Shown here: positions 6,672-24,887 of the stretch, in pieces
Layout of the letters: the number at the start of each line of letters is the position of its first letter
How positions within the stretch are numbered: position 1 is the first letter of the stretch
Virus record (IMG/VR): IMGVR_UViG_3300023184_000025
Location: 281,155-345,154 of that record
Length of the DNA: 64,000 bases
Direction: 5' to 3' (one strand)
Notes under the pieces: model-generated
Database searches by the model: none
Told to the model about the DNA's origin: nothing
The model's input: the letters and a program-made list of their open reading frames with translations, nothing else
Position numbers and translations under genes: made by a program

Positions 6672-6768
6672 TTTTATTTTCCTTAAAAAAAGAATGAGTT
6701 TTAAATCATTCACTATTATGTATCAGTGTTTGCAACAATGTTAATTAAAATTGGGGGTATTTTGGTCC

Positions 6769-6792
6769 AAAAAAAACCCGCCGAAGCGGGTT
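6769..6792 (-). terminator. intrinsic terminator ending the tmRNA transcript
   Basis: AACCCGC-TTCG-GCGGGTT followed by a T run. Confidence 0.85.
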
Positions 6793-7064
6793 CTGAGTTT
6801 CTGTTACGAGGTATGTCTTACCCTAGACGGCTTTTATCAAGCTGCCAATGCGAACTGTTCGTCGTTTGCGTTTACGTTTTTTGCTTGATTTACGGTCATC
6901 GCCTACCGTGCTGTCCACTCTGTTACTCTTTGCCCTGTCAAAACCATGCTCACCCCCGACAAGAATATACTAACCTAGTATACTCTTGGTGGAAGTGCCG
7001 GGGCTCGAACCCGGGTCCAAGACAACTTTCTCTTCGCCTCTTCCCTTTCGGGGTTTACAGCAAT
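6793..7064 (-). ncRNA. ssrA: circularly permuted (two-piece) tmRNA; tag ANDEQFALAA
   Basis: T-arm and CACTTCCACCA (3' end 6987) come first, then a 29-nt hairpin spacer, then 5' GGGGGTG (6957) with G3:U70, then tag GCA AAC GAC GAA CAG TTC GCA TTG GCA GCT TGA TAA (6869-6837). Confidence 0.9.
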
Positions 7065-7068
7065 ATTC

Positions 7069-7701
7069 TTATTTAATCAATCTACGCTTTTGTAAATTCA
7101 ATTCTGCTATTTTAGCATCGTCTGGCTTTAGATAGTAATTCTTCTCACCATCGTTATACCAGTGTCTACCAAACGCATTGTTGTTTTTATTCTTGCGTAG
7201 TTGAGTCCATTCAATTGTTGTTATCCAACCTTCTGGAATTTGTTCTTTATTATACTTTTTGCGTGATGACAAGTCAACCGCATCTTTACCCACACACCAA
7301 ACTTTTCCAAACTGCGAATTGTTTTCTTTCTGTTGGTGTTGCTTTTCAGCAAAGGTCTTCTTACGCTTTTCCATTGCTGAGTCAGTGTTTGCCAAATCAC
7401 ACACCTTCTTTTGATGTTCTTTGTTTACAGAAAAATTGTGTTCAGTGCGAATACCTGTAAATGGATTTGGGTGTAGTTGATGACGCAACTTTCCCGCTTC
7501 TCGTTGTCTTATTCTTACTAATTCTTCTTTTGGGCTTAACTTTGCTAAACCCTGCCACGCAACATAATCTTGCCAACGACCATATTCTTCATATAACTTG
7601 CGATGTGCTTCTGCGTGGTCATCAACAGATAATTCTACAAGATTGCTTGGATCGTCTGTTCCGCCTGCGTGTTTAGGAATAATATGATGTTTGTGGCTCA
7701 T
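7069..7701 (-). CDS. free-standing HNH homing endonuclease with NUMOD-like C-terminal repeats
   Basis: HKHHIIPKHAGGTDDPSNLVELSVDDHAEAH HNH core; FGKVWC / IPEGW / FGRHWYNDG repeats; TATAAATA promoter 5 nt before ATG. Confidence 0.8.
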   Translation of the reverse strand: MSHKHHIIPKHAGGTDDPSNLVELSVDDHAEAHRKLYEEYGRWQDYVAWQGLAKLSPKEELVRIRQREAGKLRHQLHPNPFTGIRTEHNFSVNKEHQKKVCDLANTDSAMEKRKKTFAEKQHQQKENNSQFGKVWCVGKDAVDLSSRKKYNKEQIPEGWITTIEWTQLRKNKNNNAFGRHWYNDGEKNYYLKPDDAKIAELNLQKRRLIK

Positions 7702-13422: not shown

Positions 13423-13893
13423 TCAAGCTACTTTTAAAGTTTTGAAACGATCAGCGGCATAGCTTGCGGCAAATGCGTTGGGTTTAACAAACGGTACAAC
13501 ATTACATGTTCCTTTAATATAGCCAATAGCCTGGCTAATAACACAGCTAGATCCATACTGATCATCAGGGTTAATGTCCAAGTGGACTTGAACCTGTCTA
13601 CCTTCAAATACATCTGCTAGCTTTAGGTACAACTCGCTAACTTTATACACTTCGGACATGAGGCGCATTGCTGGCCTATTGACTTTGTGATCGTAATCAC
13701 GTTCACGTTGTACCTCACCAAATAACTTACAACCGTTATTTCCGTTAATGTGTACAACAATAGCCAAGACGTAGTCAGCATACCACTGACCGTCAACACG
13801 CATACGTTCAGAATCACAGCCTAGATAAATTTTAGTATCTGGCCCTTGCGCTTCAATAAAGCTCTTGATTTCTTCTAGATTAATTTTTTTCAT
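13423..13893 (-). CDS. RNase H-like YkuK/DUF458 family protein
   Basis: IYLGCDS, VHLDIN, VKPNAFAASYAAD. Confidence 0.75.
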   Translation of the reverse strand: MKKINLEEIKSFIEAQGPDTKIYLGCDSERMRVDGQWYADYVLAIVVHINGNNGCKLFGEVQRERDYDHKVNRPAMRLMSEVYKVSELYLKLADVFEGRQVQVHLDINPDDQYGSSCVISQAIGYIKGTCNVVPFVKPNAFAASYAADRFKTLKVA

Positions 13894-13904
13894 GATTACC
13901 TCAG

Positions 13905-14684
13905 TTACGAGCTGGCATCAAGTACATGACTATACATGATGTCCTTTACTGTAGCAGTCCTTTCATTTTTGTTTTTGCTTCCCAATACCACAATCACGTA
14001 GTCTTTGTCTTTTTGTGTCACAAACAAACTCATACACCAACCTGCGGCATTGGTAAGACCAGTTTTGCTAATCACAATGTTGTTAAATTCAAACAACAAT
14101 GGTTGATTGGTATTGGTTAAGTTTACAATTTGAGATTTTTTCTTGACCTGTGTTTCAATTGAAACAGTTTTCTTAACTGATGCTTCTTTAATAAACCAAT
14201 AGCCGGATGCTGTTTGCACCATGTTGGCCACGTCATATACTGTGCTTACATTAAACACACTTAGGCCAGTTGGGTCAATAAATGCAGTATTATTCATTCC
14301 CCACACTTTGGCATGTAGGTTCATTTGTTTAACAAATTCGCTTCTTCCACCAGGATAATCTTCAGCAATAGTTTCGGCCGCGGCGTTGTCACTGCGAACT
14401 AGCATTGCATTTAACAGTTCGTATCTGGTGTAATATTGTCGTGGAATACTACTTGGAACACGACCACTAAGTAAAAGTTTTCTACCTAGGTCTTTGTTGT
14501 AGTCAAGTGTGACCATTGCGGTCATTAATTTAGTAATACTAGCAATAGGACGAATTTCTTCACCGTTGTGTACATATTGTGGTTTGTTGGAGACCACATC
14601 CAAGACTAATATACTTGAATCACTAGGAAATGCATAAGTGGGTATGCTAACCAGCATTGCAAGCATTATAAAAAGTCTCTTCAT
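13905..14684 (-). CDS. D-alanyl-D-alanine carboxy/endopeptidase (peptidase S11, PBP7-like)
   Basis: Signal peptide; SITK, SDN and KTG penicillin-binding motifs. Confidence 0.9.
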   Translation of the reverse strand: MKRLFIMLAMLVSIPTYAFPSDSSILVLDVVSNKPQYVHNGEEIRPIASITKLMTAMVTLDYNKDLGRKLLLSGRVPSSIPRQYYTRYELLNAMLVRSDNAAAETIAEDYPGGRSEFVKQMNLHAKVWGMNNTAFIDPTGLSVFNVSTVYDVANMVQTASGYWFIKEASVKKTVSIETQVKKKSQIVNLTNTNQPLLFEFNNIVISKTGLTNAAGWCMSLFVTQKDKDYVIVVLGSKNKNERTATVKDIMYSHVLDASS

Positions 14685-17769: not shown

Positions 17770-17798
17770 ATTGTACTTTATTTATATCTTAAAGTCAA
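17770..17798 (-). promoter_or_regulatory. composite promoter: sigma70 with an embedded T4-late-type TATAAATA
   Basis: TTGACT-ttaagaTATAAATAaag-TACAAT (17 bp spacer). Confidence 0.75.
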
Positions 17799-17845
17799 CC
17801 TTTAAGGTAAAAATGTTGTGTTGTATAGATACAACACTCCTGAGT

Positions 17846-17942: not shown

Positions 17943-18018
17943 TGGCGGTCTTAGGGGGTAACGATCCCCACTCTTACGGCGTGACAAGCCGTCGTGCGTC
18001 CATGAACACTTTAAGACC
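17943..18018 (-). tRNA. tRNA-Asp(GUC), atypical T-loop
   Basis: Loop TTGTCAC; T-loop ATCGTTA; CCA. Confidence 0.85.
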
Positions 18019-18025
18019 AAATTTT

Positions 18026-18170
18026 TATAGTCAAGCACCGAGTATGCCAATTTAGGAGTCCGGTGCTTCCGTTCCAAAGCCGATGCAGTTATATCAGGAT
18101 CCGCCTCCGGCCGATGGGACCCGAATAGTGTATGCGTCCATACACGATACCTTATCGATGCTTGACTATA
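18026..18170 (-). ncRNA. candidate stem-closed RNA cassette
   Basis: 16-bp closing helix TATAGTCAAGCATCGA/TCGGTGCTTGACTATA; inner GTGTATG-GACG-CATACAC hairpin. Confidence 0.55.
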
Positions 18171-18261
18171 AAAACATATTGAAACACACTAACTACCTTG
18201 GTATGTACTAAAGTTCATAGAACCGCTACGACCCTATCTTTAATGTGCTTCAATATGCTCT

Positions 18262-18454
18262 GCATCCCCCGGCGGTAATTATAGAGTATCAAGATACGAC
18301 GCTATCGTACCCATCACACACTCCTTCCACCCGCTTCCCGACAGGGACCGTTCTCGCATTGCTAGCGGCCTTTTGGTTCGAAGACTACCACCCGTACATG
18401 TCACTGTACTTCTCATCGTGTGGGTCACACTATCCGGAGACACCCGGAACGTTC
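18262..18454 (-). ncRNA. candidate GC-rich multi-helix RNA directly 3' of tRNA-Tyr
   Basis: At least five helices (TCCGG/CCGGA, GTACA/TGTAC, CCGCT/AGCGG, TACGA/TCGTA, GGTGGTAGT/ATTACCGCC). Confidence 0.55.
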
Positions 18455-18541
18455 TGGTGGATGAGGTTGGACTTGAACCAACAATGCCATTACGACGGAA
18501 GATTTACAGTCTCCTGGGGTTACCAATTTTCCTACACATCC
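18455..18541 (-). tRNA. tRNA-Tyr(GUA)
   Basis: Long variable arm, loop CTGTAAA, CCA. Confidence 0.92.
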
Positions 18542-18734
18542 AAAATTAGGATAAGCTACTTGTTTTCCAAACAAGCCCTTAATTGAGCGGTTACTCTGTC
18601 CATCTCTTTTATTCTAATGTCTGTGTGCAGAGAGATACTGCCTATCAGATTCTGGATTGCTCCGCTAACGGTCTTCTGCCACCGGACCTCTATCGCTAGT
18701 CAAGCGCCATTTTAACGAAAATAGTAACGGGATT

Positions 18735-18809
18735 TGGTACTGGGTACGGGAATCGAACCCGTCTTACAAACGTGAAAGGCTTGTGTCCTAACCGATAGAC
18801 GAACCCAGC
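18735..18809 (-). tRNA. tRNA-Glu(UUC)
   Basis: Loop CTTTCAC, CCA. Confidence 0.92.
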
Positions 18810-18934
18810 ATAAAGAAAAACCCTATAGCAGTCCAGTTAAGCAACCGAACAGGGCCGTGTTAAAGAGAGAAGCCACGGTTGCAGGACCTAGTGCTCTTGC
18901 GAGGAAGTATCCAGGCGATGTGGCTTCAAAAACT

Positions 18935-19024
18935 TGGCGGAGCGACTGGGAGTCGAACCCAGTCAACGCTTTAACACGTTGTACGGATTAGCAATCCGCT
19001 GCCTTACCGTTCGGCCACCGCTCC
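18935..19024 (-). tRNA. tRNA-Ser(GCU)
   Basis: Long variable arm, loop TTGCTAA, CCA. Confidence 0.93.
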
Positions 19025-19034
19025 AAAAAAAATG

Positions 19035-19270
19035 CTATATTAAAATACACTAAAGGAACCATTGTGCATCTATGTCTACACTATACGAACGTCTCGTATA
19101 GGCCTGCACGGTCATTACTGCCTACATACTCCGCCGCTTCTCTGGGATTAGTTCCGTATCATCTAAACGGACCCCGGTTTCATAGACTGTAAGATTGCGT
19201 AGGGCGGCCCCTGTGCTCGCGTCTTACAGTCCCTAACGGTGTAGGTAACCTTTAATACATTTTAATATAG
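19035..19270 (-). ncRNA. candidate 236-nt highly structured RNA heading the tRNA array
   Basis: 22-bp closing helix with 3 G-U pairs; inner GACTGTAAGA/TCTTACAGTC and CTATACGA/TCGTATAG helices; preceded by a GCAA tetraloop hairpin. Confidence 0.65.
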
Positions 19271-19344
19271 TAACCCTTGCGGGTTACTACATAAAAACTC
19301 TAAAATTTTTAAAGAACATTGTTGATTTCTCAACGTATGCATCA

Positions 19345-19373
19345 ATTATATGACACTTTGCGATTTTTGTCAA
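19345..19373 (-). promoter_or_regulatory. consensus sigma70 promoter for the tRNA array
   Basis: TTGACA-17bp-TATAAT. Confidence 0.85.
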
Positions 19374-19437
19374 CTACTTGTTTGTTGTATTTTTACAACA
19401 CTCTGTTGTTGTCCGGAATTGCTTCCTTCATGTTTCT

Positions 19438-19466
19438 ATTGTACTAGATCTGCCAATTTTGGTCTA
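19438..19466 (-). promoter_or_regulatory. second sigma70-type promoter
   Basis: TAGACC-17bp-TACAAT. Confidence 0.55.
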
Positions 19467-19471
19467 CCTAT

Positions 19472-19503
19472 AAAAAGAAAACCCGCCTAGTTGGCGGGTC
19501 TTT
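19472..19503 (-). terminator. attenuator terminator A
   Basis: AAAGACCCGCC-AACTA-GGCGGGT-TTTCTTTTT. Confidence 0.8.
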
Positions 19504-19521
19504 GTTGATAGTACTTTCTAG

Positions 19522-19626
19522 TTATCTAGATTTCTCAAGACCCGCATCAGACATGTGTTCATAGTCATAACTCACAAAATCTCGTGTGTTACTATTAGTG
19601 TGCATAGACAATGGTTGATAGTTCAT
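19522..19626 (-). CDS. putative leader peptide A (34 aa)
   Basis: MNYQPLSMHTNSNTRDFVSYDYEHMSDAGLEKSR; TATAAT 6 nt before ATG (leaderless); carries GCGGGTCTT complementary to the terminator arm. Confidence 0.6.
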   Translation of the reverse strand: MNYQPLSMHTNSNTRDFVSYDYEHMSDAGLEKSR

Positions 19627-19729
19627 AGTACTATTATATATCCATAATCTTTAAAAATTAATTTTTTCCTAGTTTTTTTACCAAAGCAACTACCCGGGTC
19701 CAAATAAATAAATTTTTAAAAAGTATCAA

Positions 19730-20434
19730 ATGATCAATACTAATACAGATAAAATAATAATTATATGTTATTCTAGTTTTAGCGGCGGAAAATTTTTAGT
19801 TAACAGTCTAGGGTTAAGCAATAAAATTGTATTACAAGATATCAACTTGGCAACACAGCAAGCAAATGGAAATTTCTCAAAACAGGAAAAGTTTGAATAT
19901 TTTGTTACAAAATTAAACGAAAATGGACCCACTAAAGAATGGAACGATCTTGGACTAGGGTGTTTTCAGTTTTTTGGTGTTCTTGACAAGGAATACTTGC
20001 AAAACAAAGTCACTGTAGAAAGATTTGACAACAAAATTTCAAATATCATTGACAATGATCTAACATTTTTTCTAGTTGCACATAATTACATTTTTTTGCC
20101 AAAATATTTAGAGGTATGGAAGAATGCAAAAATTATAGTGTTTGAAAACTCTGATTTGTTTATTAAATGGAGAACAAACGGAAAACAGACTGACAATGGT
20201 GCGTTTTCAAGAGAGAAATTTTTAGATAAAAATGTAATACACTATTTTGACAATAATAATTATTTTTCAAAAATCAAGACCCTAGACGAGATTGAAAAAA
20301 TGCATCAGGTATTAGACTTACCTGACTTTGATAAAGAGTTAGTATCAAACTACTATGATTTATGGATGAGCAAGTTACTAGAAAATAAAATATACTGGGA
20401 AAAAAGTAATAAATCTGGCAGAATCAATTTTTAA
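19730..20434 (+). CDS. hypothetical protein, possible sulfotransferase-like P-loop fold
   Basis: ICYSSFSGGKFL N-terminal motif, shared with 56857..57432. Confidence 0.4.
   Translation: MINTNTDKIIIICYSSFSGGKFLVNSLGLSNKIVLQDINLATQQANGNFSKQEKFEYFVTKLNENGPTKEWNDLGLGCFQFFGVLDKEYLQNKVTVERFDNKISNIIDNDLTFFLVAHNYIFLPKYLEVWKNAKIIVFENSDLFIKWRTNGKQTDNGAFSREKFLDKNVIHYFDNNNYFSKIKTLDEIEKMHQVLDLPDFDKELVSNYYDLWMSKLLENKIYWEKSNKSGRINF

Positions 20435-22968: not shown

Positions 22969-24887
<1,919 letters not shown>

What the first reader, a model, noticed from the sequence alone, without database searches (positions are those of the whole stretch)
19035..19290. 236-nt ornate RNA at the start of the main tRNA transcript
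Seen: a TAGTAACCC-GCAA-GGGTTACTA hairpin, then a 22-bp closing helix (3 G-U) enclosing a 10-bp helix GACTGTAAGA/TCTTACAGTC, CTATACGA/TCGTATAG, GTGCA/TGCAC, TCCGT/ACGGA and possible CCTAC/GTAGG pairing. There is no plausible ORF, and it is the first product of a consensus TTGACA-17-TATAAT promoter. It does not resemble tRNA, RNase P, SRP or tmRNA by eye.
Basis: seen in the sequence. Interest (0 to 1): 0.65.

Follow-up and report, generated by a model that had tools for sequence, protein, structure and literature searches.

The report
New structured RNA of jumbo phages
The flagged stretch encodes a real, strongly conserved, roughly 200-236-nucleotide folded RNA. It is found once per genome in many uncultivated freshwater giant phages, matches no described RNA family, is made like a small ribosomal RNA ahead of transfer RNA genes, and may even be circular.

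Summary
It lies behind a perfect TTGACA-17-TATAAT promoter and 10 nt before tRNA-Ser.

It is a family, not a chance fold:
- About 70 full-length homologues (48 distinct) occur in IMG/VR phage contigs.
- There is one copy in each of six near-complete genomes of 320-383 kb.
- 94.6% of helix cells pair, against 41-43% in slid controls, and 48 of 63 pairs show compensatory change.
- G-U pairs fix the strand.

Nothing known matches it. Rfam 15 gives no match for the window or for 12 diverse members. There is no hit in 50,697 GenBank phages or in 185,579 prokaryote species genomes.

The architecture is a 22-bp closing helix, two three-way junctions with near-invariant joining strands, a GNRA-capped arm and a probable loop-loop contact.

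The expression unit resembles an rRNA operon: promoter, boxB-like hairpin, a boxA-like sequence (11 of 13 to E. coli rrn boxA), the RNA inside a long leader-trailer-type helix, then tRNAs.

Four lake metatranscriptomes hold the RNA body but not the leader. In two, the contig is cyclic (195 and 200 nt) and joins two points inside P1. No DNA contig holds this junction.

Function is unknown. Best reading: a stable trans-acting phage RNA excised through P1. A circular form is unproven.

The parts
19345..19373 (-). sigma-70 promoter TTGACA-17-TATAAT; predicted start near 19338
   Evidence: 12 of 12 matches. A promoter with at most 2 mismatches lies within 220 nt upstream in 41 of 46 distinct family copies.
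19321..19334 (-). leader hairpin GUUGA-GAAA-UCAAC, in the place of boxB in rrn leaders
   Evidence: Read. An equivalent hairpin precedes the boxA-like sequence in the tRNA-linked homologues.
19306..19318 (-). boxA-like sequence UGUUCUUUAAAAA
   Evidence: The only exact copy in the window. 11 of 13 identical to E. coli rrsH-leader boxA TGCTCTTTAACAA, read. At most 2 mismatches in 22 of 46 copies, always 39-45 nt upstream of the RNA.
19268..19289 (-). leader hairpin with GCAA loop; its 3' strand runs 3 nt into P1
   Evidence: A hairpin at this place in tRNA-linked homologues has a different sequence. It is absent where the promoter abuts P1.
19035..19270 (-). the conserved structured RNA, primary form, P1 to P1' (236 nt)
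   Evidence: covariance model score 237.7 bits; conservation starts and stops at P1.
19249..19270 (-). P1 5' strand (22 bp closing, leader-trailer-type helix)
   Evidence: 19 of 22 pairs show compensatory change; 92.7% of cells paired.
19035..19056 (-). P1 3' strand
19241..19245 (-). P2 5' strand CCUAC (pairs with GUAGG at 19121-19125)
   Evidence: 100% paired. One position covaries: U-A to C-G in 4 sequences and U-G in 3.
19235..19239 (-). P3 5' strand CCGUU (pairs with GGCGG at 19131-19135), including an invariant U-G wobble
   Evidence: 100% paired; position 38 reads U-G 31, U-A 10, C-G 8.
19185..19231 (-). P4 arm: 10-bp base, internal loops, 4-bp tip with tetraloop GCCG (19205-19208)
   Evidence: 9 of 10 and 4 of 4 pairs show compensatory change.
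19179..19183 (-). near-invariant junction strand AUGAA between P4 and P5
19144..19175 (-). P5 arm. In most members it is capped by a GNRA tetraloop; here it carries an inserted hairpin (19153-19171).
19112..19125 (-). P2 3' strand plus invariant junction strand GUAGG-N-AGUAAUGA
   Evidence: It is invariant also in members found through the other motif.
19064..19109 (-). P6/P7 domain: P6 GUGCA/UGCAC, P7 hairpin with loop GACGU (19089-19093), conserved GUAGAC (19074-19079)
   Evidence: 3 of 5 and 8 of 8 pairs show compensatory change. The domain is replaced or shortened in some clades.
19049..19263 (-). the part held by cyclic metatranscriptome contigs: the presumed mature RNA, retaining the inner 8-9 bp of P1
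   Evidence: X15 record 6 and X19 record 27. Joints 19262 to 19049, and 19263 to TTTT to 19049.
18935..19024 (-). tRNA-Ser(GCU), 10 nt after P1; RNase P cleavage here would define the 3' flank
   Evidence: A tRNA starts within 15 nt of the RNA in about 31 of 71 copies.

Best explanation
This is a previously undescribed family of phage-encoded stable structured non-coding RNA. It is a single-copy gene in a lineage of uncultivated freshwater jumbo phages.

In this window it is made as the first product of an rRNA-operon-like unit:
- a consensus sigma-70 promoter;
- a leader with a boxB-like hairpin and a boxA-like sequence, inferred to recruit host Nus factors so that RNA polymerase reads through the untranslated array;
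- the RNA, bracketed by a 22-bp leader-trailer-type helix (P1);
- then tRNAs.

The RNA is excised by cuts inside P1 and trimmed to a species of about 195-215 nt that keeps the inner 8-9 bp of P1. The inferred route is host double-strand-specific processing such as RNase III, followed by trimming. RNase P at the abutting tRNA clears the 3' flank.

The mature RNA is a compact fold:
- two three-way junctions joined by the invariant P2-P3 stack;
- a GNRA-capped P5;
- a probable P4-loop to P7-loop contact.

About 45 near-invariant junction nucleotides form either a catalytic core or a docking site for a highly conserved host component or ligand. I commit to a trans-acting role in taking over, or protecting, the host translation and tRNA apparatus.

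Shown: the family, the fold, the strand, the promoters, the boxA-like leader, presence in RNA libraries, and ends inside P1.

Inferred: Nus-dependent antitermination, RNase III and RNase P processing, trans action, and the target.
For: Family and fold:
- Motif scans found homologues.
- nhmmer and the covariance model gave about 70 full-length matches, 48 distinct.
- 94.6% of cells pair, against 41-43% when partners are slid. 48 of 63 pairs show compensatory change and 0 of 500 shuffles reach the observed values.
- A MAFFT-only alignment, not fitted to the model, already gave 30 of 43 predicted pairs with double changes.

Strand: 273 G-U cells against 24 A-C cells.

Copy number: one copy in the window's own genome and in each of five other genomes that are 92-100% complete.

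Not a known family.

Expression signals.

Trans-acting, autonomous gene:
- It occurs with its own promoter abutting P1.
- It occurs followed directly by another promoter, or by a protein gene rather than a tRNA.

RNA evidence:
- All four lake metatranscriptomes, from four studies, hold the body.
- The leader at 19276-19400 has zero depth.
- In X15 and X19 the whole contig is the RNA body, at depth 25-32.

Processing analogy: the 27-bp leader-trailer helix of E. coli 23S rRNA is processed by RNase III and exonucleases down to the 8-bp H1 (PMC10250234).
Against: - No function is shown and no partner is identified.
- The only recurrent neighbour (phrog_1987, unknown function) lies 200 kb away in the window's own genome.
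- RNase III involvement is inferred from helix length alone. The observed boundaries (about positions 12-15 and 225-226) do not fit a simple 2-nt 3'-overhang RNase III product without further trimming.
- The boxA-like leader is present in only about half of the copies.
- The invariance of the two core motifs is partly ascertainment, because they were the search patterns. Each motif was, however, also invariant in members found through the other.
- The RNA evidence comes from assembled contigs of relatives, not raw reads of this phage. Levels, strand and exact ends are therefore not shown.
Confidence: 0.62

Rival explanations
1. The mature RNA is covalently circular in vivo. Both strands of P1 are cut about 8-9 bp from the core and the ends are joined, by a host ligase such as RtcB or by the RNA's own catalysis. 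This gives an exonuclease-resistant ring of 195-215 nt in which P1 is capped by an A-rich loop.
For: - In two lake metatranscriptomes from different studies the contig is cyclic: its first 30 nt equal its last 30 nt, which is k-1.
- The joint lies at the same place in both: 19262 to 19049 in X15, and 19263-TTTT-19049 in X19. The units are 195 and 200 nt, the sides are 53 and 74 nt, and no flank is attached.
- The joined form is absent from DNA. An exact-junction pattern and a generalised junction pattern each gave 0 hits in viral contigs and in metagenome contigs. The unjoined form occurs about 70 times in viral contigs.
- An invariant core would suit a ribozyme.
Against: - The evidence rests on contigs only, so the share of junction reads is unknown. 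A de Bruijn cycle can close on a linear RNA with only 2 chimeric reads.
- The junction lies in an A-run (AAAA at the 5' side; 3 versus 8 A's in the two runs). This fits reverse-transcriptase template switching onto oligo(A)-tailed 3' ends.
- X18 contigs of a relative are linear and reach about positions 8 and 232.
- The phage encodes no RtcB, Rnl1-type ligase, RNase III or reverse transcriptase. Its only ligase hit is an ATP-dependent DNA ligase.
- The sequence at the cut sites is not conserved.
- Whether metagenome contigs holds the family at all was not tested.
Confidence: 0.3
2. It acts only in cis for the tRNA operon. It would be a 5' structural cap, a processing module or a polymerase-modifying element that stabilises the array transcript or makes it termination-resistant, with no function once released.
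For: - It is the first element of the transcript here.
- A tRNA abuts its 3' end in about 31 of 71 copies.
- An antitermination-like leader precedes it.
Against: - About 27 of 71 copies have no tRNA within 200 nt downstream.
- Some copies are followed at once by a new promoter or by a ribosome-binding site and ORF.
- About 45 near-invariant junction nucleotides and a compact tertiary design exceed what a stabiliser needs.
- The RNA accumulates apart from its flanks.
Confidence: 0.1
3. It assembles into an RNA-only homo-oligomer. This could be a ring or cage as in ROOL and GOLLD, or a ring as in phi29 pRNA, using the complementary P4 and P7 loops between molecules.
For: - The P4 tetraloop and the P7 pentaloop are complementary over 2-3 nt. 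One position covaries (G-C in 31 sequences, A-U in 4, none unpaired) and a second is always C-G in 35 of 37.
- It shares the genomic habitat of ROOL and GOLLD, which is phage tRNA islands (10.1101/2024.12.08.627333).
Against: - The covariation cannot tell contacts within a molecule from contacts between molecules, and it stems from one clade.
- The third loop pair fails in 17 of 37 sequences.
- The RNA is three to four times smaller than ROOL or GOLLD.
- No structural or biochemical data exist.
Confidence: 0.1
4. It is a very divergent member of a known catalytic or stable RNA class, such as a minimal RNase P RNA, a group I intron, a Y RNA or 5S rRNA.
For: - Its placement among tRNAs would suit an RNase P RNA.
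- The inner P1 with bulged U's loosely recalls P4, and short strings such as AAUGAC also occur in E. coli M1 RNA (from memory).
- Excised group I introns circularise.
Against: - No Rfam model of these classes scores over the RNA at E up to 10 in the window, or at E up to 5 in 12 diverse members.
- There is no P4-type or P3/P7-type pseudoknot.
- There are no conserved flanking exons.
- The circle's last base is U, not G.
- C29 and C30 pair in P2, which covaries, rather than in a P4-like helix.
Confidence: 0.03

Closest known systems
GOLLD and ROOL RNAs (large ornate phage and prophage RNAs near tRNA islands)
   Same: - Encoded by phages, often next to or among tRNA genes.
- Function unknown and no protein partner known.
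- Elaborate covariation-supported folds; found first in lake or metagenome data.
   Different: - No sequence or structure similarity; the Rfam models do not match.
- About 200-236 nt, against about 580 and 800 nt.
- Absent from all 185,579 prokaryote species genomes, so no prophage copies are known.
- Carries a long closing helix and an rrn-like leader.
Bacterial rRNA precursors (rrn operon leader with boxB-boxA-boxC; leader-trailer helices of 16S and 23S)
   Same: - The order of elements is the same: strong promoter, hairpin, boxA-like sequence (11 of 13 here, 12 of 13 in L018), an RNA enclosed by a long helix made of its flanks, then tRNAs.
- The helix is trimmed to about 8 bp, as for 23S H1.
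   Different: - The enclosed RNA is not an rRNA; no 5S, 16S or 23S model matches.
- No boxC match was sought or seen.
- Nus-factor binding and RNase III cleavage are untested.
- Half of the family lacks the boxA-like leader.
Phage T4 stable RNAs C and D (species 1 and 2) in the T4 tRNA cluster
   Same: Small stable RNAs of unknown function, co-transcribed with phage tRNAs and released by the tRNA-processing machinery (from my own knowledge).
   Different: No T4-like phage in GenBank matches this RNA by blastn. This RNA is larger, and its homology to the T4 RNAs was not testable beyond that search.
phi29 pRNA
   Same: A phage RNA built on a three-way junction, with a 5'/3' helix and two mutually complementary loops that covary.
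   Different: pRNA belongs to small protein-primed podoviruses and their packaging motor. Here the phages are jumbo phages. The loop complementarity is only 2-3 nt and may be within one molecule.

Membership tests
Any Rfam 15 family | Covariance-model score at or above the gathering threshold, or at least a repeated weak match across members | tested here: not met
   At the gathering threshold on the whole window, only tRNAs and tmRNA match. At E up to 10 on 18000-20000, only chance-level hits (about 15-22 bits) to unrelated families touch the RNA. For 12 diverse members at E up to 5, nothing lies over the RNA.
RNase P RNA | Conserved regions CR-I and CR-V forming the P4 long-range helix; a match to the bacterial, archaeal or type-T models | tested here: not met
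   No RNase P model scores. The candidate P4-like pairing competes with P2, which covaries. Catalysis is not testable here.
Group I intron | P3-P7 pseudoknot core, a terminal G, conserved exon context, and a U-G pair at the 5' splice site | tested here: not met
   No Intron_gpI match. The helices are fully nested apart from a loop-loop contact. The flanks differ between clades. The joined form ends in U.
GOLLD / ROOL | Match to RF01998 or RF03087-type models; size 500-800 nt with multiple pseudoknots | tested here: not met
   No match; length is 236 nt. The shared feature of phage tRNA-island context is met.
Riboswitch or T-box type cis-regulator | An aptamer followed by an expression platform (terminator/antiterminator or RBS sequestration) before a regulated gene | tested here: not met
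   P1 is followed after 3-10 nt by a tRNA, or by a promoter. There is no alternative-pairing platform and no Rfam riboswitch match.
rrn-type antitermination leader (works like, for the leader only) | boxA sequence downstream of a promoter-proximal hairpin, upstream of a leader-trailer helix | tested here: met
   UGUUCUUUAAAAA at 19318-19306 compares with TGCTCTTTAACAA in the E. coli rrsH leader. It is conserved at a fixed distance in 22 of 46 copies. NusB/NusE binding is not testable with these tools.
Circular RNA | A 3'-to-5' junction present in RNA and absent in DNA; exonuclease resistance | tested here: inconclusive
   A junction is present in cyclic contigs of two RNA runs. It is absent from two DNA contig collections. 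The junction read share, matched DNA runs and RNase R could not be tested.
Protein-coding gene | A conserved open frame with codon-like substitution | tested here: not met
   The longest stop-free stretch has a median of 53 codons, in varying frames and strands. Substitutions are compensatory in helices.

The most novel reading that the evidence does not exclude
A DNA phage encodes a non-intronic, ornate RNA that is cut out of an rRNA-like precursor and covalently circularised in the bacterial cell. The RNA's own invariant core might catalyse this. The ring would then act as a long-lived effector on the host translation, tRNA or defence machinery. It would be the first such circular structured RNA of a bacteriophage.
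Probability: 0.25. Interest if true: 0.9.

Novelty: new variant of a known kind. Interest (0 to 1): 0.72.

Why it matters
Large RNAs with invariant cores and heavy covariation have so far turned out to be ribozymes, riboswitches or cores of ribonucleoproteins. Few new classes of this size remain to be found.

- This one is a single-copy, apparently core gene of a lineage of 320-383 kb freshwater phages.
- It is expressed from consensus promoters and is detectable in lake metatranscriptomes.
- It joins GOLLD and ROOL as a third, unrelated, tRNA-island-linked phage RNA. It is small enough (about 200 nt) for chemical probing, crystallography or cryo-EM with scaffolds.
- Its rrn-like leader suggests that phage tRNA arrays borrow the host rRNA antitermination and processing system.
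- If the end-joined form is real, it opens the question of how bacteria or phages circularise RNA.

Tried and rejected
- **Rfam.** Gathering and permissive scans of the window and of 12 members found nothing.
- **GenBank phages.** blastn of three divergent members found no match.
- **Cellular origin or prophage copies.** The two-motif pattern and the 19-mer core each gave 0 hits in genome contigs.
- **Tandem or permuted DNA as the source of the cyclic contigs.**
  - 0 hits for the junction patterns in viral and metagenome contigs.
  - The one tandem pair known (L066) keeps full P1 strands and its copies are diverged.
- **Rolling-circle reverse transcription of the DRT2 kind.**
  - No reverse transcriptase in the genome.
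  - The unit is full of stop codons, and 200 nt is not a multiple of 3.
- **Phage-encoded RNA repair or processing enzymes.**
  - No RtcB, Rnl1 or RNase III (the Rnl1 control rang nowhere, so that blank is weak).
  - The PF09414 hit is an ATP-dependent DNA ligase.
- **A linked protein partner.**
  - A phrog_1987 protein lies 50-900 nt downstream in seven loci.
  - In the window's own genome it lies 200 kb away.
  - Flanking window ORFs have no Pfam family.
- **Further pseudoknots by mutual information.** Only the P4b pair and the P4-P7 loop contact emerged.
- **An 8-nt complementarity to the 16S 3' region.** This is expected by chance (my estimate) and lies in paired RNA.
- **Literature.**
  - The catalogue of about 10,000 viral candidate RNAs (PMC10690425) may contain this motif unnamed. 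Its supplements are not held.
  - Lee et al. 2023 on circular RNAs is not held.
  - No paper describing this RNA was found.
- **The L003 hit of the first pattern scan** was a chance match in coding-like sequence.

Full report
**What is in the window**

The tRNAs of this window lie on the minus strand, and so does the feature. Read 5' to 3' on that strand, the elements are:
- a perfect TTGACA-17-TATAAT promoter at 19373-19345;
- a 68-nt leader;
- a 236-nt segment at 19270-19035;
- tRNA-Ser at 19024-18935, 10 nt later.

The 22-bp closing helix has exactly three G-U pairs. The segment folds at -88 kcal/mol against -68.1 +/- 4.6 for shuffles, z = -4.3. The window is the last 64 kb of a 345-kb IMG/VR virus record that is 99% complete.

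**It is a family**

- An exact search for the 10-bp helix found an identical phage and three relatives of 76-78% identity. In these, conservation begins and ends at the closing helix, and helices differ by double changes.
- Two short core motifs then retrieved many more loci.
- nhmmer and a covariance model built from seven sequences with a hand-set structure gave about 70 full-length matches, 48 of them distinct. They lie in contigs of 4-383 kb.
- On the model-fitted alignment of 49 sequences, 94.6% of cells pair, against 41-43% when partners are slid by 1-3 columns. 48 of 63 pairs show changes on both sides, and no shuffle in 500 reaches any measure.
- Such an alignment leans towards its model. 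A plain MAFFT alignment had, however, already given 30 of 43 predicted pairs with double changes.
- G-U cells outnumber A-C cells 273 to 24, so the transcribed strand is the tRNA strand.
- There is no conserved reading frame.
- The window's own genome and five other genomes of 320-383 kb (92-100% complete) hold exactly one copy each.

**Architecture** (positions count from 19273 = 1)

| Element | Positions | Notes |
|---|---|---|
| P1 | 4-25 with 218-239 | 22 bp; 19 pairs covary |
| P2 | CCUAC with GUAGG | nearly invariant; supported by one covarying position |
| P3 | CCGUU with GGCGG | nearly invariant; one varying position with one-sided changes; includes an invariant U-G |
| P4 | 43-89 | long arm with a 4-bp tip and tetraloop |
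| P5 | 99-130 | GNRA tetraloop in most members; in the window and L020 it carries an inserted hairpin instead |
| P6/P7 | 165-210 | replaced or shortened in some clades |

- P2 and P3 stack between two three-way junctions.
- The joining strands are near-invariant: GGUUACCUACACCGUUAGG, AUGAA, GCGGCGGA, GUAGG-N-AGUAAUGA and GUUCC.
- Two of these strands were my search patterns, so part of their invariance is ascertainment. Each was, however, also invariant among members found only through the other.
- Mutual information added one solid pair in P4 and a contact between the P4 tetraloop and the P7 pentaloop. One pair reads G-C 31 and A-U 4 with none unpaired, one is always C-G, and a third is kept in only 20 of 37.

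**Not a known RNA**

- Rfam 15 gives no match over the RNA in the window at E up to 10, or in 12 diverse members at E up to 5.
- Three divergent members find nothing in 50,697 GenBank phage records.
- Neither a two-motif pattern nor the 19-nt core occurs in one genome each of 185,579 prokaryote species. There is therefore no cellular homologue and no prophage copy in that set.
- I found no paper on it. A catalogue of about 10,000 unnamed viral candidates may include it, but its tables are not held.

**Context and expression signals**

A sigma-70-type promoter with at most two mismatches and a 17-bp spacer lies within 220 nt upstream in 41 of 46 distinct copies. There are three layouts.

(A) The window's layout: the promoter lies 64-71 nt upstream. 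It is followed by:
- a small hairpin;
- a sequence UGUUCUUUAAAAA, always 39-45 nt before the RNA;
- a second hairpin that abuts P1.

This sequence is 11 of 13 identical to boxA in the E. coli rrsH leader, which I read. In L018 it is 12 of 13. It scores at most 2 mismatches in 22 of 46 copies.

(B) The promoter abuts P1, so transcription starts at the helix. A palindrome spans the -10 box.

(C) The promoter is followed by a separate conserved structured element of about 90 nt, then the RNA, then the next promoter.

A tRNA starts within 15 nt of P1 in about 31 of 71 copies. It is mostly Asp, and also Ser, Leu and Glu. About 27 copies have none within 200 nt. L066 has two diverged tandem copies. 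The RNA is thus an autonomous gene, often but not always fused to a tRNA.

**RNA evidence**

- Fourteen DNA runs and six RNA runs hold part of the stretch.
- I laid 701 bases on four lake or freshwater metatranscriptomes from four studies.
- All four hold contigs over the RNA body from close or more distant relatives. The leader and promoter (19276-19400) have no depth except for one chimeric record.
- In X15 and X19 the whole contig is the RNA (225 and 230 nt, depth 32 and 25), and it is cyclic. Its first and last 30 nt coincide, and the joint runs from 19262 or 19263 back to 19049, with TTTT between in X19.
- In RNA terms, position 225 or 226 in the 3' strand of P1 is joined to about position 12 in the 5' strand. 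This keeps the inner 8-9 bp of P1 under an A-rich loop and drops the outer 11-14 bp.
- In X18, linear contigs of another relative reach about positions 8 and 232.
- These are contigs, so level, strand and the share of junction reads are not known.

**Is the joined form DNA?**

An exact junction pattern and a generalised one each gave 0 hits in viral contigs and in metagenome contigs. The unjoined gene occurs about 70 times in viral contigs. I did not test whether metagenome contigs holds the family at all.

Three readings remain:
- a true circle;
- a linear RNA whose ends, at about 12-15 and 225-226, were bridged by template switching at the A-run, possibly onto oligo(A)-tailed 3' ends;
- concatemers.

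The phage has no RtcB, RNase III, T4-type RNA ligase or reverse transcriptase. Its one ligase is a DNA ligase. I put a true circle at about 0.25-0.3.

On either reading the mature RNA is shorter than the primary helix. The E. coli 23S precursor behaves the same way: its 27-bp leader-trailer helix is cut by RNase III and trimmed to the 8-bp H1 (PMC10250234).

**How it most likely works**

- Shown: a conserved compact fold, strong promoters, a boxA-like leader in half the family, accumulation apart from its flanks, and ends inside P1.
- Inferred: the leader recruits host Nus factors so that polymerase traverses the untranslated array. P1 serves as the double-stranded processing site, which explains why all 22 pairs are kept by covariation although only 8-9 survive. 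RNase P at the abutting tRNA clears the 3' side.
- Function: the invariance of about 45 junction nucleotides, across phages whose helices have diverged freely, argues for a catalytic core or for docking to something that does not evolve with the phage. That would be a host macromolecule or a small ligand. It has no single-stranded variable segment, so it is not a guide RNA, and no expression platform, so it is not a riboswitch. I favour a trans-acting role on the translation, tRNA or defence interface, with low confidence in the target.

**Verdict**

This is a new RNA family of the same kind as GOLLD and ROOL, orphan ornate phage RNAs at tRNA islands. It is unrelated to them in sequence and structure, has an rRNA-like mode of production, and shows an unexplained end-joined form.

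Noticed in passing
window 6746-7115 (-): The phage encodes a tmRNA with tag ANDEQFALAA. ARAGORN marks it as permuted. It matches both the betaproteobacterial tmRNA model (120 bits) and the permuted tmRNA model (112 bits). This hints at a betaproteobacterial host.
   Followed up: no
L016:8060-8212, L130:7464-7616, L095:8658-8810(-), L039, L091, L105, L117: In one clade a consensus promoter is followed by a separate conserved element of about 90 nt. It has a three-way fold with a GAAA-capped arm, and 4 pairs show double changes. It lies directly upstream of the RNA. No Rfam match was seen where these loci were scanned.
   Followed up: partly
L123, L126, L020, L110, L093: the 30 nt before the RNA: Where the promoter abuts P1, a 10-nt inverted repeat (GTTCATGTGC ... 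GCACATGAAC) spans the -10 box. It looks like an operator for a repressor.
   Followed up: no
L066:76-531 (-): Two diverged copies of the RNA lie in tandem, 4 nt apart. The upstream copy has its own boxA-like leader, and a tRNA follows the downstream copy.
   Followed up: partly
window 19153-19171 (-) and L020: The 19-21-nt hairpin inserted in the P5 loop is nearly identical in the window and in L020, which belong to different context groups. It is absent from the window's closest relatives. This suggests module exchange.
   Followed up: no
window 17770-17839 and 19383-19403 (-): A second promoter-like site (TTGACT-17-TACAAT, 17798-17770) lies inside the tRNA array. It is preceded by a terminator-like hairpin whose sequence repeats upstream of the first promoter. 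Small minus-strand ORFs of 36-57 aa follow it, so the array is probably more than one unit.
   Followed up: partly
window 13423-14684 (-), 22969-24588 (-): Protein genes sit inside or beside the tRNA array: a D-Ala-D-Ala carboxypeptidase (Peptidase_S11), an RNaseH-like protein (PF04308) and a GroEL-type chaperonin. The chaperonin is 69% identical to enterobacterial GroL.
   Followed up: partly
window 18810-18934 (-): The spacer between tRNA-Ser and tRNA-Glu is partly covered by contigs in two RNA runs. It folds only modestly better than shuffles (z = -1.9).
   Followed up: partly
L020:2880-2936(-), L093: downstream of the RNA: In two loci without an abutting tRNA, the RNA is followed by a shared sequence with a T-arm-like hairpin (CUGAG-UUCGCAA-CUCAG) that ARAGORN does not call. 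It may be a tRNA-like 3' processing signal.
   Followed up: no
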